Assembly (NCBI GenBank): GCA_002104905.1
Contig: MCFE01000426.1
Location: 13,461 to 77,460 of the forward strand
Direction of reading: 5' to 3'
Origin: Basidiobolus meristosporus CBS 931.73
Lineage: Eukaryota > Fungi > Basidiobolomycota
Length of the DNA: 64,000 nt
The notes under the pieces are model-generated. The model saw only the letters and a list, made by a program, of their open reading frames with translations. It had not been told where the DNA came from and did not search any database. The position numbers and the translations under genes are program-made. Every line of letters starts with the position of its first letter. The stretch's first letter is position 1. Of this stretch, positions 355 through 64,000 are shown piece by piece.

Positions 355-1957
355 CTATTGATCATTGCTAAGTGTGTCGGTACCGATATCCTGGGCAAAG
401 GTCTCTGTGCTGTTATCCTTCTCCCCCAATAGGAGCGCCAACTCCTCATCGGGGATATGGTAGGTGTTCAGGCACTGATACGCTGTGGCTGGTGTTTCCA
501 ATTTCTCCTCCCAAGGGTAGCAGGCAGGTTGCTTTGGATTCTCGGTTTCGGGAAAAGGGGACCTGGCCAACTCATCCCATTCCACCCCTTTGAAAAAGGA
601 ATGCTGCTTGATGGAGGTGAGATTCAGTCTGGCATATGGATCAGATATGACCGTCCGCTTGAGAAGATCCACAAAGTCAGCCTCGAAGTAGGGTGGATAT
701 CGGTCTGGTATGGTGAATGAGGGGCTATCACCTTCTTGTGAGATCTTGAGGGGTACAAATGCATCCAAATAGCTGGAAAGCTTCCCATCCGGATTGTTGG
801 CTATGTGATGCTCAACATAGAGCCAGTACAGGGAAGCCGCCATACTGAACCAATCAGACACGGATCGGTCCTGTGGGTGACTGTCCATGTAAACCTCAGG
901 GGCAGTGGTCATGTCGTTAAACATCATTACATCGGACCATAATGGGCCACGAATCGGCAGCATCCCCCCGTAGTCTATCAACTTGATGTAGTCATTGGTT
1001 TTGTAGTAGGTGAACATCAGGTTGTTCGGCTTAACATCTCCATGGATTCCTCCAGTGATGTGATGGAAATGCTGCAAGCCCAGGATAAATTGCGCAAAGA
1101 TCTTCTTCAATCCCCCAGACGACACCCCAATGAATTGACTCTCCCAACTTAGATCAACACCCGACAGATACTCATACAACACGTACGGAATCCCATCAGG
1201 ATCCTGCCCGTGGCATGAGATCTTTGCTAGATATGGAGAGTGCAGGGCGTTTGTTTGCATTGAATGCATCACCTCCAGCTCCATCTCGAATGAATGGATT
1301 TCATCTTTTTGAGTGACGTTGAACCGCTTCTTTACGAAGCCCAGACCGTTGATTTTGCTCTGCAACACTGCGATAGGTCGTCGGCAATAATTTTGCAAGC
1401 AAATATTCGAACTTACAGACACGAAGTCGTCTGGTCGACAATGTGGCAAAAATCTTCCCAAATACTAGACAGAACAGAATGAGCATGTTGACGATGGCTA
1501 TTGATCCTTGGATATATACCTGTTCAATCTGATCCAAGGTTGCGTGCATATCAAAATCTCTGAATCGATTCTTGGGCGAGTTCTCCGTGTCCTCATCCTC
1601 CAGTTCGTCCTCAATAGATGTCTCTTGCCCATACGACTCTTTGGCTATTTGTGTTTCTTGTTCGTGCGACTCTTGTACTTCTTGCTCATCATCGCTAAAC
1701 AAATCATCACGAAGAATCTCCTCAATGGCCTCTTCCCACCCATCTTCTAACCCTGCCTCATGCTTCAAGGTATCAAAAGCATCCAAGAGGGGAGTTAGGT
1801 AATGGCTCGTGTCATGCAGGTTTTGGAAGTCCATTTCATCCCACAAGTTCCAGGACTCTACCGCAGACAACAGGTGCTCGAATGGTTCAAAGGTTTTTGC
1901 CAAGGCGGAACCTCCAAGGAAGCCCAAACATATCCAGTTTCTCCATAGCATCCTCAA
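355..1957 (-). CDS. Signal-peptide-containing, AGC-derived Ser/Thr protein kinase (~515 aa, 2 exons)
   Basis: Exon 1 (1957-1520, 146 codons: signal peptide plus acidic region) joins exon 2 (1464-355) through a 55-nt GT-AG intron (1519-1465), in frame (EQ|YLGRF). Motifs: FVKK, alphaC E, HGDVKPNN, DYG, APE, SDWFS and the AGC-type tail HSFFKGVEWDEL. Confidence 0.85.
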
Positions 1958-2150: not shown

Positions 2151-2790
2151 TCAATGGCCCATGGCAATTAAAATCTCCTTGGTTTGAGCAATGGTACAAA
2201 ATTCACCATTCAGATTGGACAGTGTCATTTCATGGATGTCCTCCGCGCGATGTTTCTTACCATTGGGGCCGACTCTATCGAATGTAGCACAGGCATCGTC
2301 TACCAAGAAGGTGTTGAAGCCCAGATTCCCGCTCATTCTGACCGATGTTTCCACACAGTGATTGGTTGTGAGCCCGACAAAGAATACTGTTGTACATTTG
2401 TTCCTACGTAATTCGCTTTCCAGTGGTGTTCCAATAAATGCCGAGTTCACTGTTTTCTTAAACACTGGCTCGTCAGCGTGCGGGACAGCTTCCGCTTTGA
2501 AAGCGTTTCCTGGACGCTCGGGCCTCAACAGAGATCCTGGCTCTGTGGAACAGTGTTGTATATGGAAAATCATCCGCGCGCTAGCTCTCCATGCTTTTAG
2601 CAATCTGGCAATATTCTCTTCACAATCTGGATTGTTTCTATGGCCGCCCCAATAATCAACATCATCAAAGGCTAGTTGTACGGAACCCAGAGTTGGTTAG
2701 CCGCTGAAGGAAATAGCAGCTTACGCAAAACAGATCATTACCTTGTTGGACATCAATAACGACTAGTGCGGCGCTTTGGGGAACATTCAT
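2151..2790 (-). CDS. Isochorismatase-family cysteine hydrolase (189 aa, 2 exons)
   Basis: Exon 1 2790-2742 (MNVPQSAALVVIDVQQ), 70-nt intron 2741-2672, exon 2 2671-2151; total 570 nt, in frame. Catalytic triad motifs IDVQ, KTVNSAF and GLTTNHCVETS. Confidence 0.92.
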
Positions 2791-5153: not shown

Positions 5154-7803
5154 ATGGGGAATCGAAATTCCAAAGTAGCAAACTCTGGGGAAGAAGGTAT
5201 CCAAGGTTTTCATGGCTTTGGTATAATACTTGTTCTAATTCTGACTTCGTACCTAGTGAATTTGGGTCACTTTGTCTTACAGAATAGTGTTGGTAAGGGG
5301 AGCTTTGGAAAGGTATTCCTCTTCACTTCTGCTTTCTCTCTCTCTCTTTGCCTTACTTTGACACGAATATCTCTACATATCTTGTGTATCATCCCCCCGT
5401 ACATTTCGCTTTTTCCAATCGACTTGTATCTCACTTCGCCCAAAAGTTATTTAACTAGTAGCTTGCACCTCAAGCTACCCACACTTGCTTTTTGCGACTC
5501 CATACCCAACCCATTTCACCACTACCCCCCCCTCTCCCGCCATTCCTCTCCAAGCTTCTAACCCCCCTCTCAGGTTCGAATAGTGGAGCACAAGGAGACC
5601 AAAAAGCAGTATGCTCTCAAGTATATCAACAAGGTGGAGTGTATCAGGATGAACGCGTTAAAGAACGTTCTTCGGGAGAGGAACATACTGGAGAAGCTGG
5701 ATCATCCATTCATATGCAACATGCGCTTCGCCTTCCAGGACGAGTGCAATATGTTCATGGCACTGGATTTGATGTTGGGTGGTGACCTGAGGTTTCACCT
5801 GAATCGCCGCCGATTCTCAGAAGAGGCAGTCAGATTCTGGATCACCGAGTTGGCGTGTGGTCTTCGCTATTTGCACAAGCAGTCTATCATTCACAGGTAT
5901 GATGTGGGCCGAGAGATCAGAGGGTGGAGGCTGGATGTCAGTGATTTGGTTCCAAAGCATCAGCAGCAGTGCCAACACTGGCAGAGTCTGAAAGACACCA
6001 GAGCGGAGGGGGCGAGAGTGGGTGGGGATGAAAGAGCCATGTGAGCCCAGAGACTAACCAGCGTTCTATCTTCTACTCCACTCCAGGGATATCAAGCCAG
6101 ACAACATATTGCTGGATCAGGCAGGTACGTGATATCTCCATGAGCCATACTCGAGCGGTTGAGGTGGTGGTGGTAGTAATACTGTTGTTGCCACTGCTGC
6201 CACTGCTGCTGCTGCTGTGTGACGACGAAGCTGAGTAGATCAACGCGACCAACACTAATTGCGTTTCATCAGGGCATGCACATCTCACCGACTTCAACAT
6301 TGCCATTGCGTATACCGACAAACCGTTGTGGTCCCGCTCAGGAACATACAACTACATGGGTAGGTACAATTACGAAGCCTGCGCCTCTCATCAAGACACA
6401 TCCATTGAGGCGAGCAAAGAACGGGGGAGGCAGTGGGGGGGGAGAGAATGGTGCAATGCGATATGGATGCTGAGAGTGGGAGTGGGGTGAGGGCGGGAGT
6501 GAGAGTGAGAGAACCAGCACTCATACGCTTACTTCTTTGTAGCCCCGGAGATCTTTTCCTCACAAGGGTACGGTACATCGGTGGACTGGTGGTCACTTGG
6601 AGTGGTATTCTACGAAGCAATCTACGGCAAGGTAAGAGAGAGTGATAGTTTGAGTGACTGGTGGCTGGTGACTAGTGACTAGTGACTAGTGGCCGGTACA
6701 AGAATGCAGGTATGCAGCCGAGTTCCCAGCCATTGGTCTGGGGTACGAGGGGTGTGAGTGAGAGCGAGGGTGAGGGTGAGGATGAGGATGAGGGTGAGGA
6801 CGAGAGTTGGGAAGTATTGAGTGCTGGCCACCAGAGACAGAGAGTCCAGACCTACTCGCATGGACATTGGTGTACTGACTTTGCTTTGTGTTACTAGCGT
6901 CCATTCATATTTGACCATGCTGACAAGGTGAAAGAAGCTATACAACATGCAGAGATCCAATTTCCAGAGGTCTCCAAGACTGGGCCAGTGAGCGAAGAAT
7001 GCATATCAGCCATGAAAGGGGTAAGTGCTCATGGCCCGTCAGCTCTGAATCCAATCATGATGCGGGCTCCACTACTTTGAGTAGCCGCGTGTGTGTGATG
7101 GATGAGAGAAGGCAGTGCAATGAAGTGAAATGAAGTGAAGCCAAGCGAAGTGAGCCAGGACTGACACATGGTTGCATTCACACAGTTCCTGGAGCGTGAT
7201 GTCACCCAGCGGTTGGGATGTGGGCCAGATGGGTTTCTTCACATCCAGCAGCACCCATTCTTCCGAGACATCGATTGGGATGAACTCGAGCAGAAGCGAA
7301 GCAGACCTCCATTTGCACCCAGTGTAAGTGATATCAGTACACACACACACACACACACAAATATATATATATATATGTATATATATACATGTACATAACT
7401 ATGCATCACTGCAAGGCTCATGCTAACCTCCCCTTCCTTCTAGCAAAAACGGTCAAATTTCGATATCACCTACGATCTTGAGGAACTACTACTTGAACAG
7501 AATCCACTAGAGGCTAAGCCAAGCAAACGTAGCCAAAAACTAAGAGCCACACTTGGTAAAGAGATGGAAAGTATTGAGAAGGAATTCAGGAACTTTGACT
7601 ACCTGTTGTACGAGAGGTATCCTGGATATGTTGACCCACTCAAGATGTGTGTGGGTGACCCACCTGAATGGGTAAAATGTGTGGATTCTAAGCCGATTGC
7701 TAGTGAACTGCGAGAAACCAAGAGTCTTGAAGTTATTGGGACAAATTGTGGCGAAATGCACATTCCGTTGCCAGAAACCCGTCGGCGTACCCTGGATGTA
7801 TAA
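5154..7803 (+). CDS. STK32/YANK-like AGC kinase, copy 1 (9 exons)
   Basis: Exons 5154-5196, 5257-5312, 5574-5896, 6087-6124, 6273-6359, 6543-6631, 6898-7020, 7186-7323 and 7444-7803 splice in frame. Motifs: MGNRNS (myristoylation consensus), [47 protein letters not shown]. Confidence 0.9.
7337..7390 (+). repeat. Compound (AC)n/(AT)n microsatellite in kinase intron 8, also present at ~10815-10868
   Basis: Directly visible in both kinase copies. Confidence 0.9.
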
Positions 7804-8410: not shown

Positions 8411-11276
8411 ATGGGCAACCTAAAATCAAAACACTTTGAAGATGGGGAAGACGGTAGGAATTCTCCCGCTGTTTTCTATCCCAGTCGAGCTTTCCCAAAG
8501 CCACGCTTGCTAACTTTCCTATTATTCTTTCTAAACTTTAGTGACCCTCAATCACTTTGTTTTACAAAACAGTGTTGGTAGAGGGAGTTTTGGAAAGGTA
8601 TTTCTCTTAACATTTATTTTCCTTATTCATAGTCACTCTCGAATTCCTATTTCGTGTGTACGTGGACTGCTTCCCATTCACAATGGTGGGAAGTTACGCG
8701 ATTGTCGTTTTGTATTCACCCCTTTCACACGTATATATTTATGTTTGCCTGTTTGAATTCGCGCTATTATTACTTCAAGTGTTTGATAGCGAGAAGTACG
8801 CCTAATTTGGCCTTCGCTCTGTCTCAACCTCTGTTTACTAGTAGCTTGCACCTCAAGCTATCCACACTTACTTTTTGCAACTCCACACCCAACCCATTCC
8901 ACCACTACCCCCCCCCTCTCCCGCCATTCCTCTCCAAGCTTCTAACCCCCCTCTCAGGTTCGAATAGTGGAGCACAAGGAGACCAAAAAGCAGTATGCTC
9001 TCAAGTATATCAACAAGGTGGAGTGTATCAGGATGAACGCGTTAAAGAACGTTCTTCGGGAGAGGAACATATTGGAGAAGCTGGATCATCCATTCATATG
9101 CAACATGCGCTTCGCCTTCCAGGACGAGTGCAATATGTTCATGGCACTGGATTTGATGTTGGGTGGTGACCTGAGGTTTCACCTGAATCGCCGCCGATTC
9201 TCAGAAGAGGCAGTCAGATTCTGGATCACCGAGTTGGCGTGTGGTCTTCGCTATTTGCACAAGCAGTCTATCATTCACAGGTATGATGTGGGCCGAGAGA
9301 TCAGAGGGTGGAGGCTGGATGTCAGTGATTTGGTTCCAAAGCATCAGCAGCAGCGCCAACACTGGCAGAGTCTGAAAGACACCAGAGCGGGGGGGTGAGA
9401 GTGGATGGGGATGAAAGAGCCATTTGAGCCCAGAGACTAACCAGCGTTCTATCTTCTACTCCACTCCAGGGATATCAAGCCAGACAACATATTGCTGGAT
9501 CAGGCAGGTACGCGATATCTCCATGAGCCATACTCGAGCGGTTGAGGTGGTGGTGGTAGTAATACTGTTGTTGCCACTGCTGCTGCTGCTGCTGTGTGAC
9601 GATGAAGCTGAATAGATCAACGCGACCAACACTAATTGCGTTTCATCAGGGCATGCGCATCTCACCGACTTCAACATTGCCATTGCGTATACCGACAAAC
9701 CGTTGTGGTCCCGCTCAGGAACATACAACTACATGGGTAGGTACAATTACGAAGCCTGCGCCTCTCATCAAGACACATCCATTGAGGCGAGCAAAGAACG
9801 GGGGAGGCAGTGGGGGGGAGAGAATGGTGCAATGCGATATGGATGCTGAGAGTAGGAGTGGGAGTGGGGTGAGGGTGGGAGTGAGAGTGAGAGAACCAGC
9901 ACTCATACGCTTACTTCTTTGTAGCCCCGGAGATCTTTTCCTCACAAGGGTACGGTACATCGGTGGACTGGTGGTCACTTGGAGTGGTATTCTACGAAGC
10001 AATCTACGGCAAGGTAAGAGAGAGTGATAGTTTGAGTGACTGGTGGCTAGTGACTAGTGACTAGTGACTAGTGACTAGTGGCTGGTACAAGAATGCAGGT
10101 ATGCAGCCGAGTTCCCAGCCATTGGTCTGGGGTACGAGGGGTGTGAGTGAGAGCGAGGGTGAGGATGAGGATGAGGATGAGGATGAGGATGAGGATGAGG
10201 ATGAGGATGAGGATGAGGATGAGGATGAGGATGAGGATGAGGATGAGGATGAGGATGAGGGTGAGGACGAGAGTTGGGAAGCATTGAGTGCTGGCCACCA
10301 GAGATAGAGAGTCCAGACCTACTCACATGGACATTGGTGTACTGACTTTGCTTTGTATTACTAGCGTCCATTCATATTTGACCATGCTGACAAGGTGAAA
10401 GAAGCTATACAACATGCAGAGATCCAATTTCCAGAGGCCTCCAAGACTGGGCCAGTGAGCGAAGAATGCATATCAGCCATGAAAGGGGTAAGTGCTCATG
10501 GCCCGTCAGCTCTGAATCCAATCACGATGCGGGCTCCACTACTTTGAGTAGCCGCGTGTGTGTGATGGATGAGAGAAGGCAGTGCAATGAAATGAAGTGA
10601 AGTGAAGTGAAGTGAAGCCAAGCGAAGTGAGCCAGGACTGACACATGGTTGCATTCACACAGTTCCTGGAGCGTGACGTCACCCAGCGGTTGGGATGTGG
10701 GCCAGATGGGTTTCTTCACATCCAGCAGCACCCATTCTTCCGAGACATCGATTGGGATGAACTCGAGCAGAAGCGAAGCAGACCTCCATTTGCACCCAGC
10801 GTAAGTGATATCAGTACACACACACACACACACACAAATATATATATATATATGTATATATATACATGTACATAACTATGCATCACTGCAAGGCTCATGC
10901 TAACCTCCCTTCCTTCTAGCAAAAGCAGTCAAACTTTGATATCACCTACGATCTTGAGGAACTACTACTTGAACAGAATCCACTAGAAACAAGGCCTCGT
11001 AAGCGCAACCAAAAACTAAGAGCCACGCTTGGTAAGGAATTGGAACGTATTGAGAAGGAATTCAGGAACTTTGACTACCTGTTGTACGAGAGGTATCCTG
11101 GATATGTTGACCCACTCAAGATGTGTGTGGGTGACCCACCTGAATGGGTAAAATGTGTAGATCCTGAACCAGCCCTTTCAGATACTCGTGGCACCAAAAG
11201 TCTGGACGGATTTGATTCGGACAACGAAGACTTTGCACCATTCTACGATATTCGTAGAAGAACTATGGACGTCTAA
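8411..11276 (+). CDS. STK32/YANK-like AGC kinase, copy 2 (tandem paralogue, 9 exons)
   Basis: Same exon structure as copy 1. Starts MGNLKS, contains GRGSFG, and the last exon is 10920-11276. The central region is nearly identical to copy 1. Confidence 0.9.
10161..10260 (+). repeat. (GAGGAT)16 hexanucleotide microsatellite in intron 6 of kinase copy 2
   Basis: Perfect tandem array. The equivalent site in copy 1 (~6778-6790) has only 2 units. Confidence 0.95.
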
Positions 11277-52949: not shown

Positions 52950-55018
52950 AGCCAATTTTTTGCCGCTTGGTCAATTTTATATGCTATGAAAGCCAATCTT
53001 TGTGGTGCCTTAGTTGGTATATCTACAATCTCATTCAGCACTGGGGGAGTCAGGTACTCGTGTTGTACTGTTTCTCACAGATAGGAATGGTGCTTAACAT
53101 ACCTGGCTTGACTCTTGTGCAGAAAATTGGATTCTTTGTTATCAAACTACAGCTTCCAATCTTCTTTAGCTCTTAGTTTGGTCTTCTGGGGGGATTGGGA
53201 CTGGATCATACTGTCAGAATGCTAGGAGGTTTTTGTATAAACTCTGGCATATTGAGATTCATCCATCATTTAGGAGTGTCTTTTGGTAGAAAATCATATT
53301 ACCCTATGCAAAAGATTTGAAATGATCCTGTCACAAGACTGACAAAAAATTAGGATCTCATGACCTTATTGTAGATTTTGCAATTCCACCTAAATATCTC
53401 ATTAAGTTGGTCACTTATATCATAGTCTGTAGATCCTGGAATATCTTACCTGTATTCTCTGTTGGAATATATCTGCAATATTTGTTGTAAGAGTCTTGGA
53501 GATATTGGAAGTGATTGGGAGAACAAGTAGATTATGTGGTTTTCACTTAATAATTTATTGAATGTAAAAGTAGTATTTATACCTTTACCTGGTCTTGGCA
53601 TTACAAACACGTAGAATAGGTTAAGGAAGGTCCCAAGAACATGTGTGCAAAGTTTGGGCTGTTTGGACAACTTTGAGAATTTTCATGTTCTGGGTACCTG
53701 GCATTTTGGTGAAAATATTCTAAGTAAATCCCGACAAGGAATTTGGTCAGTATTCTCTAGGATTTGAGGGTAATGATCTAAGTGACTAAGTTAGGTGAAT
53801 ATTTAGGTGGAAATTACGAATTTTACAACAATATTTACCCTAAATGTCAAGTACCCAGAACATTAGAATTTGTTAAGTTGTCCAGAGGTCTCCAAACCTT
53901 GCACATATGATCTTGAAGCCTTACTGAACATATTCTATTGGCTTGTAACAATATGAATATAGCTTTGACACTCAATAAATCACCAAGCAAAAGCCACACA
54001 ATCCACCTATACTCCCAATCACCTCCCTCAATGAGAGTTAGTTGTTGATGGTCTGCAATGTCAATCACCTCATCTGCCAGTCTTTGCAATAAATCCTTGC
54101 AATATTCAAGTGTACTTTCCAGAATATGGCCCATGAAGAAGTGGTGCAACCACTTGGTGTGAGTAATATTGTTCCAAGATTCCACTGTATGCATGGTAAT
54201 ATACACTGATTTCTTGATGTTGTTGCATTCCCTATGAAAACTAATTTGGTCCTGCAGGTGGATCCAATCTGGATCAGCCATCAGGATCCCATTTAGAGAT
54301 TGTTGTAATACCAGCAGCTTGGAATTAGTGACCCTCTAAACAATCTTATGACAAGATCATCATGGTGTTTTGCTAATTTTACTGCCAAATAAAGATTTAA
54401 AACTTGATGGGATTTGATTGGTGCTGTGATAATAATTGGATGGCATTGTTGCAGTCTTATCATGCTCTACAACTATTCTAAATGGATCTAACTGGCCAGG
54501 ACATCCAATTGCCTTATATGGCAAAAATCTCAATGGTATTTCAACAGCCTCACAGCAAGATTCTGATGACATTATAATGGCAGTATGGCAGCCTACAGCT
54601 AGTTTGGTATTTGGGTAATAATAATGTGTTGAGTTATGAAGTAAGTCCCCTGGATCTCATGCTTTTGACAGCAATACCATTCATTGTGACCAGAAAAGCT
54701 GGCTATCTTGCTGATGGCTGGGGTACTCCAATGCAGATAATAATATGTGCTTTGACATGAAAGTCATTCACTGATATCCTGCTGGAAATCATACAAAATT
54801 CTTTCAGCAATGGATACAGGTAGCTATCCAGGTTGGACAGTGATTTAGGCCCATATACTAGTGAGCCTACCATCAGATTATTGCTCTGATACTGCAAGAT
54901 ATGTGGCAGATTCAGGTTGATGAGAATCAGCAGCCAGCAGGATTTGCTGGTACAGTACTTGTTTGATGAGAGTCCATAATGTGCCAAGGCAAAGGCATGA
55001 TCATGTTTACCTTCAAAG
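52950..55018 (-). mobile_element. Decayed CACTA/En-Spm-like (Tnp2) DNA transposase relic, interrupted by a solo LTR
   Basis: Fragment WLLILINLNLP...Y...N....LVYGPK...LDSYLYPLLKE...F...AHIIICIG matches the recalled fungal Tnp2 pattern. Multiple stops and frameshifts; boundaries approximate; no TIR found. Confidence 0.6.
53483..53830 (-). mobile_element. Ty1/Copia solo LTR A (348 bp) with 5-bp TSD ATATT
   Basis: TGTTGTAA...TTACAACA termini; ATATT on both flanks. Confidence 0.95.
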
Positions 55019-55543
55019 TGCTGTAAGAGTCTTGGAGATATTGGAAGTGATATGGGAGGACAAGTAGATTATGTGGTTCTCACATAATGATTTATTGAAT
55101 GAAAAGTAGTATTTATACTTTTACATGATCTTGGCATAACAAACACGTAGAATAGGTTAAGGAAGGTCCCAAGAGCATGTGTGCAAAGCTTGGGGCTGTT
55201 TGGACAACTTTGAGAATTCTCATGTTCTAGGTACCTGGTACTTTGGTGAAAATATTCTAAGTAAATCCTAACAAGGAATTTGGTCAGTATTCTGTAGGAT
55301 TTGTAGGTAATGTTCCAAGTGACTAAGTTAGGTGAATACTTAGGTGTATGTACAAATTTTTACAACACTCCCACATAGCTAAATGCTCATACTGACTAGT
55401 CCTAATTTTGACCTAAGATATTCTAACTTGTCTCTAGCTAATGGTTTGGTAAATATGTCTACAATCATTTCATCTGAAGGGCAGTAAACTAGGCAAACTA
55501 AGTTAATTTCTAAAGCTTCACATATGAAATGATGTCTAATATG
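55019..55543 (-). mobile_element. Copia element 1 remnant: 3' LTR B (55019-55367), PPT and the end of RNase H
   Basis: The LTR is followed by CTCCCAC (PPT on the minus strand) and the pol C-terminus, which is cut at 55543 by LTR C. Confidence 0.88.
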
Positions 55544-58222
55544 TGTTGTAAGAGTCTTGGAGAAATTGGAAGCAAATGGGAGGACAAGTAGATTATGTGG
55601 TTTTCATTTAATGATTTATTGAATATAAAAGTAGTATTTATACTTTTACATGATCTTGGCATAACAAACATGTAGAATAGGCTAAAGAAGGTCCCAAGAG
55701 CATGTCTGCAACATTTGGGGCTGTTTGGACAACTTTGAGAATTTTCATGTTCTGGGTACCTGGTATTTTGGTGAAAATATTCTAAGTAAATCCTAACAAG
55801 GAATTTGGTCAGTATTTTCTGGGATTTGAAGGTAATGATCTAAGTTTCTAAGTTAGATGAATATTTAGGTGGAAATACAAACTTTTACAACACTCTCACT
55901 CAGCTAAATGTTCATGCTGACTAGTCCTAATTTTAACCTAAGATATTCAAACTTGTCTCTAGCTAATGGTTTGGTTAATATATCTGCAATCAATTCATCT
56001 GTAGGACAGTAAGCTAAGCTAACTAAGTTATTCTCTATAGCTTCACATATGAAATGATGTCTAATATCTATGTGCTTGGTTCTAGCATGAAAAGTTGGAT
56101 TTCTACCTAATTGTATACATCCTTGATTATCTTGAAATAATGTAATAGGCATTTTTTGACATAGGCCTAAATCTGTAAAAAGCTTTCTTAACCACATTGC
56201 TTCTTTTGTAGCTTCACAGGGTGCCATATACTCTTCCTCTGTGGTAGAAAGTGCCACGGTTGGTTGCTTTCTTGAGTTCCATGAAATTGCTCCTTGACAG
56301 TAAAGAAAGGTGTATCCTGTGGTGGATCTTCTGTCTTCTAAATTTTGTCTCCAATCAGCATCAGAGTATCCCACAAGATCCTGTTCTGAGTCCTTATAAG
56401 TGTATCTTAAGCAAATATCAGCAGTTCCTTTTAGATATCTAAAATCCGCTTAACTGCTGCAATATGATCAGATTCATAGTTCTGATTATGTTGGCTGACA
56501 ACTCCCACTGAATATGAGATATCTGGACATGTTCAAAGCATGACATACATCAGACTGCCAACCATAGATTGATAAGGAAAGTTAGGGCTTTCAGATGGTG
56601 CCAAGCTCTCTTGATTTGGTTGAGTTTTGACCAAGTTAAGGTTTGTTTCCATTGGGGTAGCTGCCAGTTTACAGTCTTCCATTTGGTACTTCTTTAGTAT
56701 ATCTTGATTATACTTGGATTGGCTTAGGGTGATAGTCTGGGTACTACTGTCTATGGAGAACTTAATCCCTAGGTAGTAACTGAGTTCTAGATTGGACATC
56801 TTGAACTCTTTAGATAGGCTGGATTTAGTCTTTTCCAATGTTTCTAGGTTATTGGTGGCTATAATAAGATCATCCACATATAGATCTAATAGAACTGGAT
56901 TTGCTCTATCTGGCTTATAGTATATACTATAGTCAGCATTACTCCTTTTGAAACTCAAAGATTCCAAATAAGTATCTATCTTGCAATACCAGGCTCTTGG
57001 TGATTGTTTAAGACCATATAGAGACTTTTTGAGCTTGCAGACCAAATGGGGGTTATACTGGTCAACAAACCCATCAGGCTGGTCCATATACACATCCTCA
57101 TCAGGTTCTTCATTCAAAAATGCAGTTTTTACATCCATTTAATGAATAAAAACTTATATTTGGCTGCAAAAGCCAATATTAATCTGATGGAATTAAACTT
57201 GGCTACCAGTGCCAAGGTCTCAGTATAGTCAAGTCCTTTTGTGTGAGAGTATTCTTTGGCTACAAGTCTTGCTTTGTCTCTTTCAATTGTACCATCAGCC
57301 TTGTATTTTGTCTTGAAGACCCATCTGCATCCAATTGATTTTTGGTTGATTGGTAATTTGACTAAGTCCCAAGTTTGATTTTCCATCAGGGCTGGATATT
57401 CCTCAGTCATTGCAGATCTCTAAAACTTTGTCTGAGGGCTATTTAGGGCCTCTTTTACAGTCTGGGGTTCACCAATATGGACTAAATAGGCATAGGCTAA
57501 GTTTGTACCCTCATTGATATATTAATTTGGGCTATTTCTTGTCCAATTGGATCTCAGGGCATTTGATACTATAATGATCACTTCTGGGATATTCATGGGC
57601 CCTGATTCTGGCTAAACAATGGTTGTAGAGTCCTCTGGAGTGAAAAAAATTCATTGTTTTGCTCTGATTCAATCCTGACAATTGGTGGACTTGAGATCAG
57701 ATTCTTGTCATCATCTGATGTTATTTTTGTGAAAATTTTGAATTTTTATCAAACAACACATCCCTGGACTTGATTAGCTTCTTTGTTTTGGTATTGTACA
57801 GTCTGTATGCCTTACTCTCATTGCAGTAGCCCGTAAATATGCATTTTACACTTTTTGGCTCAAATTTTGACTGATTTCCAGGCAGTTTTTTGGCATATGC
57901 TGTACACCCAAATATTCTTAGATGTTCTGCACCTGGTCCGTATCCATACCATGCTTCAAATGGAGTAGAACCACAAAGTATTCTGTTATAACTCCTATTT
58001 GAAAGATATACAGCAGTGGCAACTGATACTGCCCAAAAATCATAGGACAATTTTTGGTCATGGATCATAGATCTTGCCGTATCAATTATTGATCTGTTAG
58101 CACACTCTGCTACTCCATTTTGCTGTGGGGAGTATATTACAGTAGTCTCTTGCTTTATCCCATGAATTTTGCAGAAGTGAAGCAAGAGTTTTGAGGTATA
58201 TTCTCCACCATTGTCAGAGCGT

Positions 58223-59372
58223 TGTGGTAGGGTAAACATACCTCCCACAGACAAGTTTATTCATATAGCAATTTTGATATACATATCCATATTTTATCTT
58301 ATCAGTATTATCCCATTCTTCTTTTGTCCATATTATCAGTTTAATCCCCATATGATGTTTACCCTGATTAGTTATTAGCATTAGTTATCCCAGATGTTAT
58401 TCAGCTTTGTGATCAGTATATGTATCCACATAAGGCAAGTACCCATGTCAGCACCTGTGACACATGACCTAGGTCTGTGTTACCATCCTTACCATTGCAA
58501 TGCCATATACGGTATTTCTATGTTGCACAGCTTTCAGACTACTGATCCCTAATTGGTTGGATGTGCTGTGCCTTTTAGAACCTTCCAGGACATTCTTGGC
58601 ATATTTATAGTTCATAGTGATGTCATCAAGAATTCCACTGATGCCTAGAATCTTCTAGAACCTTGTCATTAGTAATCACTTGGCAATCAGGAAAAGTACT
58701 TAAGGGAATGCAATCCCTTGTCAATAAATCATCACTTGTATCAGTAACACTTCTACCATATTGATTAGTGGTTGTGTTGTAAAAATTCGTATTTTCCACC
58801 TAAATATTCACCTAACTTAGTCACTTAGATCATCACCTTCAAATCCTAGAGAATACTGACCAAATTCCTTGTTGGGATTTACTTAGAATATTTTCACCAA
58901 AATACCAGGTACCCAGAACATGAAAATTCTCAAAGTTGTCCAAACAGCCCCAAACTTTGCACACATGTTCTTGGGAACTTCCTTAACCTATTCTACGTGT
59001 TTGTAATGCCAAGACCATGTAAAAGTATAAATACTACTTTTACATTCAATAAATCATTAAGTGAAAACCACATAATCTACTTGTTCTCCAAATCACTTCC
59101 AATATCTCCAAGACTCTTACAACAGGTTGATCACTGCACCTGCCTTCAGCAGCACATCTAGACCTGCCATCAAGGAGCCTTTCAGGGTAGTGCACAAGAC
59201 ACACAGAGGCCTTTGGAGACACTTGGAGCACCTAGGAAGCTAGAGAAGCAGGAGCTTTTACCATAGTGACATAAACACCAGCAGTTTAGACACAGAGGTT
59301 ATTGCACCCATCAGACACATCACACACCTTGAGTTGTGTAGCTTCTCCCAGGAATACCTCTACACCACTGCA
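58223..59372. mobile_element. Second-family noncoding TG...CA element (~795 bp net, probable solo LTR) inserted in the integrase of element 2
   Basis: pol is broken at GAGCGT and resumes at GCAT|ATTCTC (4-bp TSD GCGT/GCAT, one mismatch). The insert starts TGTGGT and ends ACCACTGCA. Confidence 0.7.
58775..59124 (+). mobile_element. Copia solo LTR D in the opposite orientation, TSD GGTTG
   Basis: Reverse complement of LTRs A, C and E; GGTTG on both flanks. Confidence 0.95.
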
Positions 59373-60097
59373 GCATATTCTCTTGACTTTTTCACCAGTT
59401 TCTCTTTCCATCATGGCTTTAAGCTCCCTGAACTGAGATGGAGCTTCTTCCTTTCTCTTTATGAAGTAGACCCATGTGTATCTTGTATAATCATCAATAA
59501 AAGTGATTAAATACTTCATCCTGCCTAATGATAAATTTTGCCTAGGTCCACACAGATCTGAGTGAATTAGATCTAAATTTTCTTAGTTTTGATCAACCCA
59601 GAGCTCTTGAATGGTTGTCTGGCTTGTTTCCCATATATGCAAGCTTCACAGTGCTCCAAGTTAGCTGGAGGATCAATTTTCACTCCAGAAATTAGCTGAT
59701 CATTGATCATTTTGCACAAATAATCAAAATTGAAGTGCCCAAATCTCCTGTGCCAAACCATTGGTGTTTCTTCATTTAAGTTACTTATTTTGGCTTCCAA
59801 ATATGATGGAACATAAGTCAACTTCTATAGATTCTGATCTCTGATACCTAAAGCAATATGGGCACCATTTTGATCAGTGATATTGCATCCAGAATTGTCA
59901 AAGCTGAAACTGAGTCCTTCTGCTGTGGCCTTGCTTACACATAGTAGGTTTTTGGCTATTTCTGGTACCTAGGGTACTTCTTTAAAGGTCAGTGTATGGC
60001 TGCCTTCACTGCTTCTAAGATTTACTTGCATTGTTCCTTCTCCCACTGCTTCAAGTGTTCTATTGTCACCCATGGAAACATTTTTAATTGGAATTCC

Positions 60098-60422
60098 CTA
60101 TGAAAAATAATTTGGTCCCACAGGTGGATCCAATCCAGATCATCCGTCAAGATCCCATTCAGAGACTGTCATAATAACAGCAGCTTGGAATTAGTGACCC
60201 TCCTGATGATCTTATAACAAGATCATGACGGTGTTTTGCAAATTTTTCAGCCAAATAAAGGGATAAAACTTGACAATTTTTGATTGGTGCTGTGAAGATA
60301 TTTGCATGTTATTGTTGCGGTCTTTCAGCACTCTATTACTATTTTAAGTGGATCCAGTTGGCCAGGACTTCCAATTGCCTTATATGGCAAGAAACTTGAC
60401 GGTATTTTGACAGCCTCACAGC
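60098..60422 (-). mobile_element. Second fragment of the CACTA-like transposase (homologous to ~54230-54557)
   Basis: Direct alignment by eye, e.g. CAGCAGCTTGGAATTAGTGACCCTC and CCAATTGCCTTATATGGCAA are shared. Confidence 0.85.
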
Positions 60423-63400
60423 TGTTGCAAGAGTCTTGGAGATATTGGAAGTGATTTGGAGAACAAGTAGATTATGTGGTTTTCACTTAATGATTTATTG
60501 AATGTAAAAGTGGTATTTATACTTTTACCTGGTCTTGGCATTACAAACACGTAGAATAGGTTAAGGAAGGTCCCAAGAACATGTGTGCAAAGTTTGGGGC
60601 TGTTTGGACAACTTTGAGAATTTTCATGTTCTGGGTACCTGGCATTTTGGTGAAAATATTCTAAGTAAATCCCAACAAGGAATTTGGCCAGTATTCTCTA
60701 GGATTTGAGGGTAATGATCTAAGTGACTAAGTTAGGTGAATATTTAGGTGGAATTACAAATTTTTACAACACTCCCACTCAGCTAAATGCTCATACTGAC
60801 TAGTCCTAATTTTGACCTAAGATATTCAAACTTGTCTCTAGCTAATGGTTTGGTTAATATATCTGCAATCAATTCATCTGTAGGACAGTAAACTAAGCTA
60901 ACTAAGTTATTCTCTATAGCTTCACGTATGAAATGATGTCTAATATCTATGTGCTTGGTTCTAGCATGAAAAGTTGGATTTCTACCTAATTGTATACATC
61001 CTTGATTATCTTGAAATAAAGTAATAGGCGTTTTTTGACATAGACCTAAATCTGTAAAGAGCTTTCTTAACCACATTGCTTCTTTTGTAGCTTCACAGGC
61101 TGCCATATACTCTGCCTCTGTGGTAGAAAGTCCTACGGTTGGTTGCTTTCTTGAATTCCATGAAATTGCTCCTTTACAGTAAAGAAAGGTGTATCCTGTG
61201 GTGGATCTTCTGTCTTCTAAATTTCGTCCCCAATATGCATCAGAGTATCCCACAAGATCCTGTTCTGAATCCTTATAAGTGTATCTTAAGCAGATATCAG
61301 CAGTTCCTTTTAGGTATCTAAAAATCCGCTTAACTGCTGCAATATGATCAGATCCATAGCTCTGATTATGTTGGCTGACAACTCCCACTGAATATGAGAT
61401 ATCTGGACGTGTTTCAAGCATGATATACATCAGACTGCCGACCATAGATTGATAAGGAAAGTCAGGGCTTTCAGATGGCACCAAGCTCTCTTGATTTGGT
61501 TGAGTTTTGACCAAGTTAAGGTTTGTCTCCATTGGGGTAGCTGCCGGTTTACAGTCTTCCATTTTGTACTTCTTTAGTATATCTTGAATATACTTGGATT
61601 GGCTTAGGGTAATAGTCTGGGTACTTCTGTCTATGAAGAACTTAATCCCTAAGTAGTAACTAAGTTCTCCTAGATCGGACATCTTGAACTCCTTAGATAG
61701 GCTGGATTTAGTCTCTTCCAATGTTTCTAGGTTATTGGTGGCTATAATAAGATCATCCACATATAGAGCTAATAGAACTGGATTTGCTCTATCTGGCTTA
61801 TAGTATATACTATAGTCAGCATTACTCCTTTTGAAACTCAAAGATTCCAAATAAGAATCTATCTTGCAATTCCAGGCTCTCGGTGATTGTTTGAGACCAT
61901 ATAGTGACTTTTTAAGCTTGCAGACCAAATGGGGGTTATCTTGGTCAACAAACCCATCAGGCTGGTCCATATACACGTCCTCATCAAGTTCTCCATTCAA
62001 AAATGCAGTTTTTACATCCATTTGATGAATAAAAAACTTATATTTGGCTGCAATAGCCAATATTAATCTGATGGAATTAAACTTGGCTACCGGTGCAAAG
62101 GTCTCAGTATAGTCAAGTCCTTTTGTTTGAGAGTATCCTTTGGCTACAAGTCTTGCTTTGTATCTTTCAATTGTACCATCAGCCTTGTATTTTGTCTTAA
62201 AGACCCATCTGCATCCAATTGATTTTTGGTTGATTGGTAATTTGACTAAGTCCCAAGTTTGATTTTCCATCAGGGCCTGATATTCCTCAGTCATTGCAGA
62301 TCTCCAAAACTTTGTCTGAGAGCTATTTAGGGCCTCTTTTACAGTCTGGGGTTCATCAATATGGACTGAATAGGCATAGGCTAAGTTTGTACCCTCATTG
62401 ATATAGTAATTTGGGCTATTTCTTGTCCGGTTGGATCTCCGGGCATTTAATACTGGAATGATCACTTCTGGGATATTCCTGGGCACTGATTCTGGCTGAA
62501 CCATGGTTGTAGAGTCCTCTGGAGTGAAAAAATTTTCATTGTTTTGCTCTAATTCAATCCTGACAATTGGTGGACTTGAGATCAAATTTTCGTCATCATC
62601 TGATGTCATTTTTTGTGAAAATTTTGAATTTTCATCAAACAACACATCCCTGGACTTGATCAGCTTCTTTGCTTTGGTATTGTAGAGTCTGTATGCCTTA
62701 CTCTCATTGCAGTAGCCCAAAAATATGCATTTTACACTTTTTGGCTCAAATTTTGACTGATTTCTGGCCAGTTTTTTGGCATATGCTGTACACCCAAATA
62801 TTCTTAGATGTTCTGCACTTGGGCTGTATCCATACCATGCTTCAAATGGAGTAGCATCACAAAGTATTCTGTTATAACTCCTATTTTTAAGATATACAGC
62901 AGTGGCAACTGATTCCGCCCAAAAATCATAGGATAATTTTTGATCATGGATCATAGATCTTGCCATATCAATTATTGATCTGTTAGCTTGTTCTGCTACT
63001 CCATCTTGCTGTGGGGAGTATGGTACAGTAGTCTCTTGCTTTATCCCATGAATTTTGCAGAAGTGGATGAAGAGTTTTGAGGTATATTCTCCACCATTGT
63101 CAGAGCGTATTTTCTTGATTTTTTCACCAGTTTCTCTCTCCACCATGGCTTTAAACTCCCTGAGCTTAGACAGAGCTTCTTCCTTTCTCTCCATGAAGTA
63201 GACCCATGTGTATCTTGTATAATCATCAATAAAAGTGATTAAATACTTCATCCCGCCTAAGGATAAATTTCGCATAGGTCCACACAGATCTGAGTGAATT
63301 AGATCTAATTTTTTCTTAGTTTTGATTAACCCAGAGCTCTTGAACGGTTGTCTGGCTTGTTTCCCATATATGCAGGCTTCACAGTGCTCCAAATTAGCTG

Positions 63401-64000
63401 GGGGATCAATTTTCACTCCAGAAATTAGCTGATCTTTGATCATTTTGCGCAAATAATCAAAATTGATGTGTCCAAATCTCCTGTGCCAAAGCATTGGTGT
63501 TTCTTCATTTAAGTTACTTATATTGGCTTCCAAATATGATGGAATATAAGTCAACTTGTATAGATTCTGATCTCTGATGCCCAAAGCAATATGAGCACCA
63601 TTTTGATCAGTGATCCTGCATCCAGAATTGTCAAAACTGAAACTGAGTCCTTCTGCTGTGGCCTTGCTTACAGAGAGTAGGTTCTTGGCTATTTCTGGTA
63701 CATAGAGTACTTCTTTAAAGGTCAGTGTATGGCTTCCTTCACTGCTTCTAAGGTTTACTTGGATAGTTCCTTCTCCCACTGCATCAAGTGTTCTATTGTC
63801 ACCCATGAAAACCTTCTTAATTGGAATTTCTTGATATTGGGTAAAAAGTTCTTTTTGGTGTGTAAAGTGTTGAGAAGCTCCAGAGTCAATATACCACGTC
63901 TGAGAATCCTTGTTTGTGGTCATATTTAGTGCAGATATGAATAGTCTATCTCAGTTGTTGCAGCATTTCCATATTCAGGCTTCTTTTGCTGATAATCTCT
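60423..64000 (-). mobile_element. Copia element 3: 3' LTR E (60423-60771), PPT and an intact pol ORF; the 5' part is outside the window
   Basis: LTR TG...CA of 349 bp and PPT GAGTGGGAG. Domain order PR-INT-RT-RH is diagnostic of Ty1/Copia. Confidence 0.96.
60783..63923 (-). CDS. Ty1/Copia pol polyprotein (1046 aa)
   Basis: WYIDSGAS (protease), LWHRRFGH...CEAC (integrase HHCC region), HSDLCGP / RSDNGGEY (DDE), YVDDL (RT), YSDA...RRSTTG (RNase H). Confidence 0.96.
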   Translation of the reverse strand: MTTNKDSQTWYIDSGASQHFTHQKELFTQYQEIPIKKVFMGDNRTLDAVGEGTIQVNLRSSEGSHTLTFKEVLYVPEIAKNLLSVSKATAEGLSFSFDNSGCRITDQNGAHIALGIRDQNLYKLTYIPSYLEANISNLNEETPMLWHRRFGHINFDYLRKMIKDQLISGVKIDPPANLEHCEACIYGKQARQPFKSSGLIKTKKKLDLIHSDLCGPMRNLSLGGMKYLITFIDDYTRYTWVYFMERKEEALSKLREFKAMVERETGEKIKKIRSDNGGEYTSKLFIHFCKIHGIKQETTVPYSPQQDGVAEQANRSIIDMARSMIHDQKLSYDFWAESVATAVYLKNRSYNRILCDATPFEAWYGYSPSAEHLRIFGCTAYAKKLARNQSKFEPKSVKCIFLGYCNESKAYRLYNTKAKKLIKSRDVLFDENSKFSQKMTSDDDENLISSPPIVRIELEQNNENFFTPEDSTTMVQPESVPRNIPEVIIPVLNARRSNRTRNSPNYYINEGTNLAYAYSVHIDEPQTVKEALNSSQTKFWRSAMTEEYQALMENQTWDLVKLPINQKSIGCRWVFKTKYKADGTIERYKARLVAKGYSQTKGLDYTETFAPVAKFNSIRLILAIAAKYKFFIHQMDVKTAFLNGELDEDVYMDQPDGFVDQDNPHLVCKLKKSLYGLKQSPRAWNCKIDSYLESLSFKRSNADYSIYYKPDRANPVLLALYVDDLIIATNNLETLEETKSSLSKEFKMSDLGELSYYLGIKFFIDRSTQTITLSQSKYIQDILKKYKMEDCKPAATPMETNLNLVKTQPNQESLVPSESPDFPYQSMVGSLMYIMLETRPDISYSVGVVSQHNQSYGSDHIAAVKRIFRYLKGTADICLRYTYKDSEQDLVGYSDAYWGRNLEDRRSTTGYTFLYCKGAISWNSRKQPTVGLSTTEAEYMAACEATKEAMWLRKLFTDLGLCQKTPITLFQDNQGCIQLGRNPTFHARTKHIDIRHHFIREAIENNLVSLVYCPTDELIADILTKPLARDKFEYLRSKLGLVSMSI

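What the first reader, a model, noticed from the sequence alone, without database searches (positions are those of the whole stretch)
355..1957. Apparently secreted AGC-derived kinase whose Gly-rich loop is replaced by a CxxxxC staple
Seen: after removing a 55-nt intron, an N-terminal signal peptide (MRMLWRNWICLGFLGGSALA) and an acidic region precede a kinase that keeps the beta3 Lys, alphaC Glu, HGDVKPNN, DYG, APE and an AGC-type HxFFxGxxW tail. Aligning DDFVSVSSNICLQNYCR with canonical DDFxxxxxLGKGSFGK puts CLQNYC (1401-1384) exactly on GxGxFG, with Cys at the first and last Gly positions. Established: fungal kinases are essentially cytosolic; secreted kinases lacking a Gly loop are known from Toxoplasma (WNG family), and secretory-pathway kinases from animals (Fam20). 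Inference: an extracellular or host-delivered non-RD kinase or pseudokinase with a disulfide-locked P-loop, possibly a lineage-specific effector family. This is my top candidate for an undescribed system.
Basis: partly seen in the sequence, partly recalled or inferred. Interest (0 to 1): 0.82.

Follow-up and report, generated by a model that had tools for sequence, protein, structure and literature searches.

The report
Signal-peptide kinase lacking the glycine loop
A Basidiobolus fungus gene encodes a PKA/PKC-like protein kinase that carries a secretion signal and conserved cysteine pairs and has a cysteine-bracketed loop where the ATP-binding glycine loop normally sits, so it probably works outside the cytosol; this kind of fungal kinase was not found described in the papers searched.

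Summary
The gene lies on the minus strand: ATG 1951, a 55-nt phase-0 intron at 1519-1465, stop 357-355, 144 + 369 codons. Three related Basidiobolus genes have an intron at the same site. Codon changes across the CxxxxC stretch are mostly synonymous. The public B. meristosporus model is mis-spliced and hides the motif.

All four Basidiobolus proteins (two paralogues in two species) share:
- an N-terminal signal-like peptide and an acidic linker;
- a full set of catalytic residues;
- NIC-x-Q-x-YCRR in the beta1-beta2 loop instead of GxGxxG;
- six invariant cysteines and two invariant N-x-T sequons.

A search of 1.84 billion cluster representatives found no other close relative. It did reveal a wider clade in unidentified, possibly fungal, eukaryotes (UFBoot 100). 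Its members have signal peptides, no Gly loop, a non-RD catalytic loop and two invariant Cys, and often sit in four-gene tandem arrays.

Best reading (about 0.55): an active AGC-derived kinase of the secretory pathway, stabilised by disulfides.

Not shown: expression, secretion, the disulfides, activity, or any effector role. Two corrections: the start is ATG 1951, not TTG 1957, and the Cys pair brackets the Gly positions rather than replacing them exactly.

The scan had already noted this same stretch in another window (s1-209817).

The parts
355..1951 (-). Whole gene: ATG 1951 to stop 357-355, two exons, 513 codons
   Evidence: Identical to the exon parts of B. meristosporus P0001. In-frame stop at 1972-1970 just upstream of the ATG.
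1898..1951 (-). Signal-like peptide of 18 residues: R4, an uncharged stretch N5-A18, and A-L-A before K19
   Evidence: Maximum Kyte-Doolittle(9) value 1.71, the weakest of 23 family members, all of which have such a peptide. SignalP was not available.
1520..1897 (-). Acidic linker or pro-region of 126 residues (16 D, 23 E, 7 K/R). Its last residues, together with the start of exon 2, look like an alphaA-type helix.
   Evidence: 28% identity to B. ranarum over an open frame (E = 5e-13). No significant Pfam domain.
1465..1519 (-). Intron: 55 nt, GTATAT..CTAG, phase 0
   Evidence: Same position and phase in L001 (60 nt), L002 (67 nt) and L003 (65 nt). Retention gives stops in those three genes. 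No RNA run was listed.
355..1464 (-). Exon 2: 369 codons plus stop, holding the whole kinase domain and the C-terminal tail
   Evidence: Pfam Pkinase 2e-18, matched from profile position 28. AF2 model pLDDT 81.5. Best Foldseek matches are PKA.
1438..1440 (-). Cys9, five residues before the DDF that starts beta1
   Evidence: Invariant in all Basidiobolus and wider-clade members.
1375..1407 (-). Beta1-beta2 loop N20-P30 (N-I-C-L-Q-N-Y-C-R-R-P) in place of the Gly-rich loop; C22 at 1401-1399, C27 at 1386-1384, R28-R29 at 1383-1378
   Evidence: AF2 strands 14-19 and 31-36. N20, I21, C22, Q24, Y26, C27, R28 and R29 are invariant in four proteins. Register to PKA.
1327..1329 (-). Beta3 lysine K46
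   Evidence: Invariant in 9 of 9. Maps to PKA K72 through the HMMER offset.
1312..1320 (-). N-x-T sequon N49-V-T
   Evidence: N49 and T51 are invariant in four proteins.
1279..1281 (-). AlphaC glutamate E62
   Evidence: Invariant in 9 of 9.
1213..1215 (-). Cys84 in beta4, within the motif SPYLAKISCHG
   Evidence: Invariant in all Basidiobolus and wider-clade members.
1021..1044 (-). Catalytic loop HGDVKPNN (non-RD)
895..975 (-). Activation segment from DYG to APE, with no TFCGT-type PDK1 site
616..624 (-). N-x-T sequon N281-L-T
   Evidence: N281 and T283 are invariant in four proteins.
577..603 (-). AGC-type end of the domain, HSFFKGVEW
472..528 (-). Conserved tail: PACYPWEEKL (C315 at 522-520) through C331 (474-472) and the LNTY motif
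   Evidence: P313, A314, C315, Y316, W318, E319, K321, C331, T334 and Y335 are invariant. MAFFT places this stretch opposite the AGC active-site tether and hydrophobic-motif regions. AF2 confidence is below 50 here.

Best explanation
The gene encodes an active Ser/Thr kinase of AGC ancestry that works in the secretory pathway (ER or Golgi lumen) and/or outside the cell.

Proposed course of events:
1. The N-terminal peptide directs co-translational ER import and is probably cleaved after A18.
2. An acidic region of about 125 residues follows. It may be a linker or a pro-region.
3. The kinase domain folds oxidatively with three disulfides, inferred from which cysteines occur together:
   - C9-C84, the hallmark of the wider clade, tying the pre-beta1 linker to strand beta4;
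   - C22-C27, closing a six-residue ring in the 11-residue loop that replaces the Gly-rich loop;
   - C315-C331, within the AGC-type C-terminal tail.
4. Two invariant N-x-T sequons are probably glycosylated.

ATP phosphates would be held partly by the invariant R28 and R29 at the loop tip rather than by Gly backbone amides. This parallels R312/R313 of Toxoplasma WNG1.

The non-RD catalytic loop, the missing PDK1 site and the missing hydrophobic motif fit a constitutively active enzyme cut off from cytosolic regulators.

Shown here: the gene structure, conservation of the motifs, the AGC-like fold, family membership and taxonomic restriction.
Inferred: secretion, the disulfide pairing, glycosylation, the role of the Arg pair and activity.
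Substrates are unknown. The most likely candidates are the fungus's own secreted or cell-wall proteins.
For: - Splice model: intron at the same site and phase in the three related genes; purifying selection in this frame.
- Signal-like peptide in 4 of 4 Basidiobolus genes and in 23 of 23 clade members with complete N-termini, against 14% of 133 generic kinases (median maximum KD9 2.70 versus 0.92, P = 9e-13).
- No second hydrophobic segment and no KDEL- or HDEL-type ending.
- Six of six Cys invariant (P = 0.0035). C9 and C84 are invariant down to about 25% identity, while C22/C27 and C315/C331 occur only together.
- Two invariant sequons.
- Catalytic residues K46, E62, D143, K145, N148, D164 and P189-E190 of the APE motif (A188 varies: SPE in P0109) are invariant across the wider alignment.
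- AF2 model with pLDDT 81.5 keeps beta1 (14-19) and beta2 (31-36) with the Cys pair in the loop between them. Best structural matches are PKA; best sequence matches are PKC theta, MRCK, GRK, ROCK, S6K and PKA.
- Precedent for an Arg pair replacing Gly-loop function in a secreted kinase: PMC6442604.
Against: - No RNA run was listed, so neither expression nor the intron is confirmed by reads.
- No SignalP or DeepTMHMM run was possible, and this copy has the weakest N-terminal hydrophobic peak of the family (1.71).
- The tail holding C315 and C331 is modelled at pLDDT below 50.
- The B paralogues have a seventh Cys in the mature protein.
- Four N-lobe cysteines could instead bind a metal in a cytosolic protein.
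- ATP is scarce outside cells, so a purely extracellular role would be hard to sustain.
- Activity without a Gly loop is known for only a few kinases.
Confidence: 0.55

Rival explanations
1. A secreted or lumenal pseudokinase or binding protein. It enters the secretory pathway and is disulfide-stabilised as above. Without a Gly loop it does not transfer phosphate and instead acts as a scaffold, a ligand, or a nucleotide or other small-molecule binder.
For: GxGxxG is absent from all four proteins, and Pfam matches only from profile position 28. DYG replaces DFG, and the catalytic loop is non-RD.
Against: The beta3 Lys, alphaC Glu, catalytic Asp, Lys and Asn, and the Mg-binding Asp are invariant down to about 25% identity. 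That is not expected once catalysis is lost. WNG1 shows that a kinase without a Gly loop can be active (PMC6442604).
Confidence: 0.13
2. A cytosolic or membrane-tethered kinase. The N-terminal hydrophobic stretch is not a working signal peptide; it could be an uncleaved anchor or an annotation accident. The N-lobe cysteines would form a metal site or a redox switch rather than structural disulfides.
For: The hydrophobic peak of this copy is weak (1.71). No signal-peptide predictor or localisation data were available. Four Cys (C9, C22, C27, C84) lie in one lobe.
Against: The N-terminal peptide is kept in 23 of 23 clade members even though its sequence is not conserved. The cysteines co-occur in pairs, not as a set of four: C9/C84 occur without C22/C27 in the wider clade. 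Two N-x-T sequons are invariant. PDK1 and hydrophobic-motif regulation are both lost. With R4 at the N-terminus, even an uncleaved anchor would place the kinase in the lumen.
Confidence: 0.17
3. A host-delivered effector: the secreted kinase acts on or inside animal gut or tissue cells.
For: It has a signal peptide and belongs to a lineage-restricted family in an animal-associated fungus.
Against: There is no translocation motif, no expansion (two copies per genome) and conserved synteny. The sequence is under purifying rather than diversifying change. Relatives occur in environmental eukaryotes of unknown lifestyle.
Confidence: 0.08
4. A receptor-like transmembrane kinase, as in the public JGI model P0001: signal peptide, acidic ectodomain, a membrane helix read from the retained 55 nt, and a cytosolic kinase lacking beta1 and the loop.
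For: P0001 reads through 1519-1465 and gives a hydrophobic 19-mer with Kyte-Doolittle value up to 2.44.
Against: That reading needs a frameshifted stretch and a second splice at GTAAGT 1416. It deletes residues that are conserved in the three other genes. Retaining the intron gives stops in L001, L002 and L003.
Confidence: 0.02

Closest known systems
AGC protein kinases (PKA, PKC theta, GRK2, ROCK, S6K)
   Same: They give the best sequence and structure matches. The bilobal fold and all catalytic residues are shared. The domain ends with the AGC-type H-x-F-F-x-x-x-x-W, followed by a conserved C-terminal tail.
   Different: This protein has a signal peptide and an acidic N-terminal region, and no GxGxxG. 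Its catalytic loop is non-RD (HGD) and it has DYG. It lacks the TFCGT activation-loop site and the F-x-x-F-S/T-F/Y hydrophobic motif. It has six invariant Cys and two invariant sequons.
[quoted passage not shown]
   Same: Both carry a signal peptide, are secreted, lack the Gly-rich loop and keep the catalytic residues. A conserved Arg pair sits where the loop would lie (R312/R313 there, R28/R29 here).
   Different: There is no specific sequence kinship; the PDB hits are AGC kinases. In WNG, beta1 and the loop are replaced by a helical lid and the strand order changes. Here AF2 keeps the beta1-loop-beta2 hairpin. The paper's main text does not contain the word 'disulfide'.
Animal secretory-pathway kinases (Fam20C, VLK/PKDCC, POMK, FAM69/DIPK)
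   Same: They share the topology of a signal peptide or anchor with a lumenal kinase domain. From general knowledge, they also have conserved disulfides, glycans and an atypical nucleotide loop. FAM69 is described as a Cys-rich predicted kinase family in PMC3696010.
   Different: The families are unrelated. Only Pfam Pkinase is hit here, and this protein comes from the AGC branch of canonical kinases.
Newly seen wider clade of signal-peptide kinases in unidentified eukaryotes (P0056, P0109, P0172-P0182; arrays on L004, L006, L008)
   Same: All have a signal-like peptide, no GxGxxG, a non-RD catalytic loop (HAD, HTD, HHD), invariant Cys at the C9 and C84 positions, an L-Q motif in the loop, the P-Y-F/L-A-x-x-x-C beta4 motif and an H-x-x-F-x-x-x-x-W ending. 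They form one clade with Basidiobolus at UFBoot 100 / SH-aLRT 99.
   Different: Identity is only about 25%. They have no conserved CxxxxC, no C-terminal tail with C315/C331 and no acidic linker. They sit in four-gene tandem arrays. P0109 still has Gly residues in the loop.

Membership tests
AGC kinase group | Catalytic domain most similar to AGC members | tested here: met
   PDB phmmer and profile hits are led by PKC theta, MRCK, GRK2, ROCK2, S6K and PKA. The top Foldseek matches are PKA.
AGC kinase group | C-terminal extension starting with H-x-F-F-x-x-x-x-W | tested here: met
   HSFFKGVEW at 603-577, aligned to the HPFF..IDW consensus.
AGC kinase group | Hydrophobic motif F-x-x-F-S/T-F/Y in the tail | tested here: not met
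   The tail has Q-C-L-N-T-Y at the aligned place and no F-x-x-F.
AGC kinase group | Activation-loop Thr in a T-F-C-G-T context (PDK1 site) | tested here: not met
   The activation segment runs from DYG to APE with M-F-N-D-M-T-T-A-P-E in place of that motif.
AGC kinase group | Gly-rich loop GxGxxG | tested here: not met
   The loop is N-I-C-L-Q-N-Y-C-R-R-P. Pfam matches only from profile position 28.
WNG kinases (Toxoplasma) | Signal peptide and no Gly loop | tested here: met
   (signal peptide judged by hydrophobicity and conservation only).
WNG kinases (Toxoplasma) | Beta1 and loop replaced by a helical lid, with changed strand order (PMC6442604) | tested here: not met
   AF2 predicts strands 14-19 and 31-36 flanking the loop, at pLDDT 91/75/93.
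WNG kinases (Toxoplasma) | Sequence kinship with the WNG/ROPK clade | tested here: not met
   The top 60 PDB sequence hits are AGC or CAMK kinases, with no BPK1 or ROP chain among them.
Fam20 / four-jointed secretory kinases | Fam20-type kinase domain | tested here: not met
   The Pfam scan reports only Pkinase plus two sub-threshold hits.
Wider signal-peptide kinase clade (defined here) | N-terminal signal-like peptide | tested here: met
   Present in 23 of 23 members with complete N-termini.
Wider signal-peptide kinase clade (defined here) | Invariant Cys before beta1 and in beta4; non-RD loop; no GxGxxG | tested here: met
   Alignment A3 and the array genes. P0109 is the exception for the loop (GGQSNG).
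Wider signal-peptide kinase clade (defined here) | Monophyly against other kinases | tested here: met
   IQ-TREE with LG+C20 PMSF on 47 rows gives UFBoot 100 / SH-aLRT 99. The branches are long, so artefact is not fully excluded.
Disulfide-bonded secretory protein | Cys pairs within bonding distance, oxidised in the native protein | not testable with these tools
   Model coordinates are not exposed and the tail is modelled at pLDDT below 50. Only the co-occurrence of Cys pairs supports this.

The most novel reading that the evidence does not exclude
Basidiobolus, and a wider and so far unnamed eukaryotic clade, carry a family of canonical-kinase (AGC) descendants re-targeted to the secretory pathway. 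These would be fungal counterparts of Fam20C, VLK or WNG. The Gly-rich loop has been lost, and in Basidiobolus it is replaced by a disulfide-closed loop with an Arg pair that holds ATP. This would be an independent origin of lumenal or extracellular protein phosphorylation and a new structural solution for nucleotide binding.
Probability: 0.45. Interest if true: 0.78.

Novelty: new variant of a known kind. Interest (0 to 1): 0.66.

Why it matters
The secretory-pathway and secreted kinases considered here come from animals (Fam20, VLK) and apicomplexan parasites (ROPK, WNG). In my full-text searches I found no description of a fungal one.

If this family is lumenal or secreted and active, three things follow:
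- It would be an independent recruitment of an AGC kinase to the secretory pathway.
- It could explain how fungal secreted or wall proteins become phosphorylated.
- It would provide a second natural example, after WNG, of catalysis without a Gly-rich loop, here with the hairpin kept and apparently stapled.

There is also a practical point. No public model of the A paralogue shows both features. P0001 (B. meristosporus) splices out the CxxxxC, and P0002 (B. ranarum) starts after the signal peptide. Automated secretome or kinome surveys would therefore have missed both features in the A paralogue (the B models show them).

Tried and rejected
- RNA evidence: the look-up of sequencing runs listed no run.
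- AF2 on the four-sequence alignment gave an unusable model (pLDDT 39). A 62-sequence alignment was needed.
- Cys-Cys distances could not be measured because no coordinate files are exposed.
- The GTAAGT at 1416 as a second intron was rejected. Removing 57 nt keeps the frame but deletes the conserved NIC-x-Q-x-YCRR, which is under purifying selection.
- The JGI retained-intron, transmembrane reading was rejected.
- The CxxxxC of P0056 as an independent second occurrence was rejected, because its orthologue L006_k2 lacks it.
- A giant-virus origin was rejected. It was suggested only by feature similarity in the Atlas, and the viral contig scan gave only weak generic kinase hits.
- A microsporidian origin of the tandem-array organism was rejected, because its contig encodes a mitochondrial-type uL14.
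- Naming that organism failed. The SWD2 search returned only unnamed relatives, the Atlas was uninformative, and accession searches in papers found nothing.
- The PAS hit in exon 1 (E = 0.046) was ignored as insignificant.
Full report
**Organism and gene model**

The window matches Basidiobolus meristosporus CBS 931.73. The public protein P0001 ('kinase-like protein', 515 aa) is identical to the window translation wherever the two models overlap. The gene is on the minus strand. The first in-frame ATG after the stop at 1972-1970 is at 1951. The TTG at 1957 is only the bacterial-code ORF start.

- exon 1, 1951-1520, 144 codons;
- a 55-nt GT..AG intron, 1519-1465;
- exon 2, 1464-355, 369 codons plus stop.

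No RNA run was listed, so the model was tested by comparison instead.
- The B. ranarum orthologue P0002 lies in a syntenic locus with the same isochorismatase neighbour.
- P0002 and the two paralogues, P0003 (B. ranarum) and P0004 (B. meristosporus), each have one phase-0 intron at exactly the same codon boundary. Their lengths are 60, 65 and 67 nt.
- Retaining the intron introduces stop codons in all three.
- Over the first 45 codons of exon 2, which include the Cys motif, window and B. ranarum differ at codon positions 1/2/3 by 8/5/22. There are 21 synonymous and 8 non-synonymous codon changes.

The JGI model P0001 reads through the intron, shifts frame and re-enters at a GTAAGT. That creates a spurious transmembrane-like segment and deletes the motif. 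It is wrong. The NCBI model P0002 starts too far downstream. An in-frame upstream ATG at L001 3839 adds a signal-like peptide, MRISWIFLSSLSATSWA.

**What the protein contains**

Exon 1 gives an 18-residue signal-like peptide with R4, an uncharged stretch N5-A18, and A-L-A before K19. It is followed by 126 residues of which 39 are D or E.

Exon 2 is a protein kinase domain.
- Pfam Pkinase scores 2e-18, but matches only from profile position 28, after the Gly loop.
- The best solved relatives are AGC kinases: PKC theta, MRCK, GRK2/3, ROCK2, S6K and PKA.
- An AF2 model built on a 62-sequence alignment is confident over the core (mean pLDDT 81.5). It matches PKA best.

In the model, beta1 is residues 14-19 and beta2 is 31-36. 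N20 to P30 (N-I-C-L-Q-N-Y-C-R-R-P) is therefore the hairpin loop that replaces the Gly-rich loop. It is three residues longer than in PKA.

The HMMER offset to PKA (query 33 = PKA 59, so K46 = K72) puts Q24, Y26 and R29 on G50, G52 and G55, and C27 on S53. MAFFT gives the same register. The Cys pair therefore brackets the Gly positions rather than replacing the first and last Gly exactly.

**Conservation**

The four Basidiobolus proteins share N20, I21, C22, Q24, Y26, C27, R28 and R29. All six Cys of exon 2 (C9, C22, C27, C84, C315, C331) are invariant, while only 145 of 369 columns are (hypergeometric P = 0.0035). Two N-x-T sequons (N49, N281) are invariant.

The tail after the AGC-type H-x-F-F-x-x-x-x-W is strongly conserved: P-A-C-Y-P-W-E-E-K, then C-L-x-T-Y. 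MAFFT places it opposite the active-site-tether and hydrophobic-motif regions of AGC tails. It has no F-x-x-F-S/T-F/Y motif, and AF2 does not place it confidently. There is no second hydrophobic segment and no KDEL-type ending.

**Distribution**

A profile of the four proteins was scored against 1.84 billion cluster representatives. Only the two Basidiobolus clusters scored highly (731 and 720 bits). The next hit scored 95 bits and was a generic kinase. The close family is therefore confined to Basidiobolus, with two unlinked paralogues per genome.

Two of the weaker hits, P0056 and P0109, aligned from the very N-terminus of the profile and carried signal peptides. Following them up gave these results:
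- P0056 is one of four tandem kinase genes on a compact eukaryotic contig (L004).
- The same four-gene array, next to SWD2, PTH2, NTE and PDH-E1 genes, recurs in an ENA metagenome scaffold (L006) and in three NCBI assemblies (L008-L010).
- About a dozen orthologues occur in other samples.

Every member has a hydrophobic N-terminal peptide: 23 of 23 with complete N-termini, with a median maximum Kyte-Doolittle(9) of 2.70. Among 133 generic kinase hits the median is 0.92 and 14% reach the family minimum (P = 9e-13). All have Cys at the C9 and C84 positions. All have a non-RD catalytic loop (HAD, HTD, HHD, HGD; HCD in two array genes, L006_k2 and L008_k4). All but P0109 lack GxGxxG.

A careful IQ-TREE analysis (LG+C20 PMSF, 47 rows) joins the four Basidiobolus proteins and 13 of these into one clade. 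Support against 30 generic, mostly AGC, kinases is UFBoot 100 / SH-aLRT 99 (quick trees gave 94 and 96). The branches are long, so some caution remains.

The array organism has a mitochondrial-type uL14. Its best eukaryotic match in the PDB is the Neurospora mitoribosome. It is therefore not a microsporidian and may be a fungus. I could not name it. Giant-virus contigs hold only weak generic kinase matches.

**Cysteine logic**

- C9 and C84 occur in every member of the wider clade.
- C22 and C27 occur only in Basidiobolus, and always together.
- C315 and C331 occur only where the Basidiobolus tail exists, and always together.

P0056 has its own CxxxxC in the loop, but the orthologue L006_k2 lacks it, so that one is not conserved. 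This pairwise co-occurrence is what disulfides C9-C84, C22-C27 and C315-C331 would produce. It fits a four-Cys metal site less well. The isolated beta-bridge at residue 8 in the model is compatible with the pre-beta1 linker lying on an edge strand, but this proves nothing.

**Mechanism proposed**

The N-terminal peptide brings the protein into the ER, where it folds oxidatively and is glycosylated. The kinase then acts in the lumen and/or after secretion.

The catalytic machinery is intact down to about 25% identity, which argues for activity rather than a pseudokinase. The invariant R28-R29 at the loop tip aligns with PKA F54-G55, next to S53. From general knowledge, backbone amides at those PKA positions hold the ATP phosphates. 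R28-R29 could take over that role. In Toxoplasma WNG1, mutating R312/R313 near the missing Gly loop lowers activity (PMC6442604).

The non-RD loop, the absent PDK1 site and the absent hydrophobic motif fit an enzyme that cytosolic regulators cannot reach. Substrates, and any role toward animal hosts, are unknown. Nothing here supports host delivery.

**Comparison with known systems**

- By descent it is an aberrant AGC kinase.
- By lifestyle it resembles WNG/ROPK, which are secreted. WNG also lacks a Gly loop, but in WNG beta1 is replaced by a helical lid and there is no sequence kinship.
- It also resembles animal Fam20C, VLK and FAM69, which are lumenal, disulfide-rich and unrelated in sequence.
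- Full-text searches found no description of a fungal secreted kinase of this kind or of the wider clade.

I class it as a new variant of a known kind.

**Limits**

- There is no expression evidence, no signal-peptide predictor run, no Cys distances and no biochemistry.
- The joined full-length sequence was never searched or folded.

Noticed in passing
window 355-1951; P0001, P0002: Both public models of this paralogue are flawed. P0001 (JGI) retains the 55-nt intron and splices out the Cys loop. P0002 (NCBI, B. ranarum) starts at a downstream Met and loses the signal-like peptide encoded from L001 3839.
   Followed up: yes
L004 2365-8140; L006 10001-15919; L008 2615-9441: A syntenic tandem array of four signal-peptide, Gly-loop-less kinase genes lies next to SWD2, PTH2, NTE and PDH-E1 genes. 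It comes from an unidentified compact-genome eukaryote found in a Logan run, an ENA metagenome and three NCBI assemblies (GCA_048222815, GCA_048222835, GCA_048222875).
   Followed up: partly
L005 5001-6074 (P0109): A single-copy member of the wider clade. It has a signal peptide and both hallmark Cys but still carries Gly residues in the loop (GGQSNG), so it may be an intermediate state. The neighbouring gene at L005 3526-4773 also starts with a signal-like peptide and has no Pfam match.
   Followed up: no
window 5250-7700 and 8540-11170: A tandem duplication of about 3.4 kb at 91-100% identity. Each copy carries a multi-exon canonical kinase gene with an ordinary GKGSFGKV Gly loop.
   Followed up: partly
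window 54001-64000: GC content falls to 37-38.5%, against 42-48% in the rest of the window. The cause was not examined.
   Followed up: no
window 2151-2603 (minus strand): An isochorismatase-family gene lies immediately upstream of the kinase. The same neighbour is present in B. ranarum (L001 2816-3457), which confirms orthology.
   Followed up: partly
L004 3576-4904 (P0056): This protein has its own C-E-D-N-N-C in the beta1-beta2 loop. The pair is absent from the orthologue on L006, so it is not a conserved feature.
   Followed up: yes
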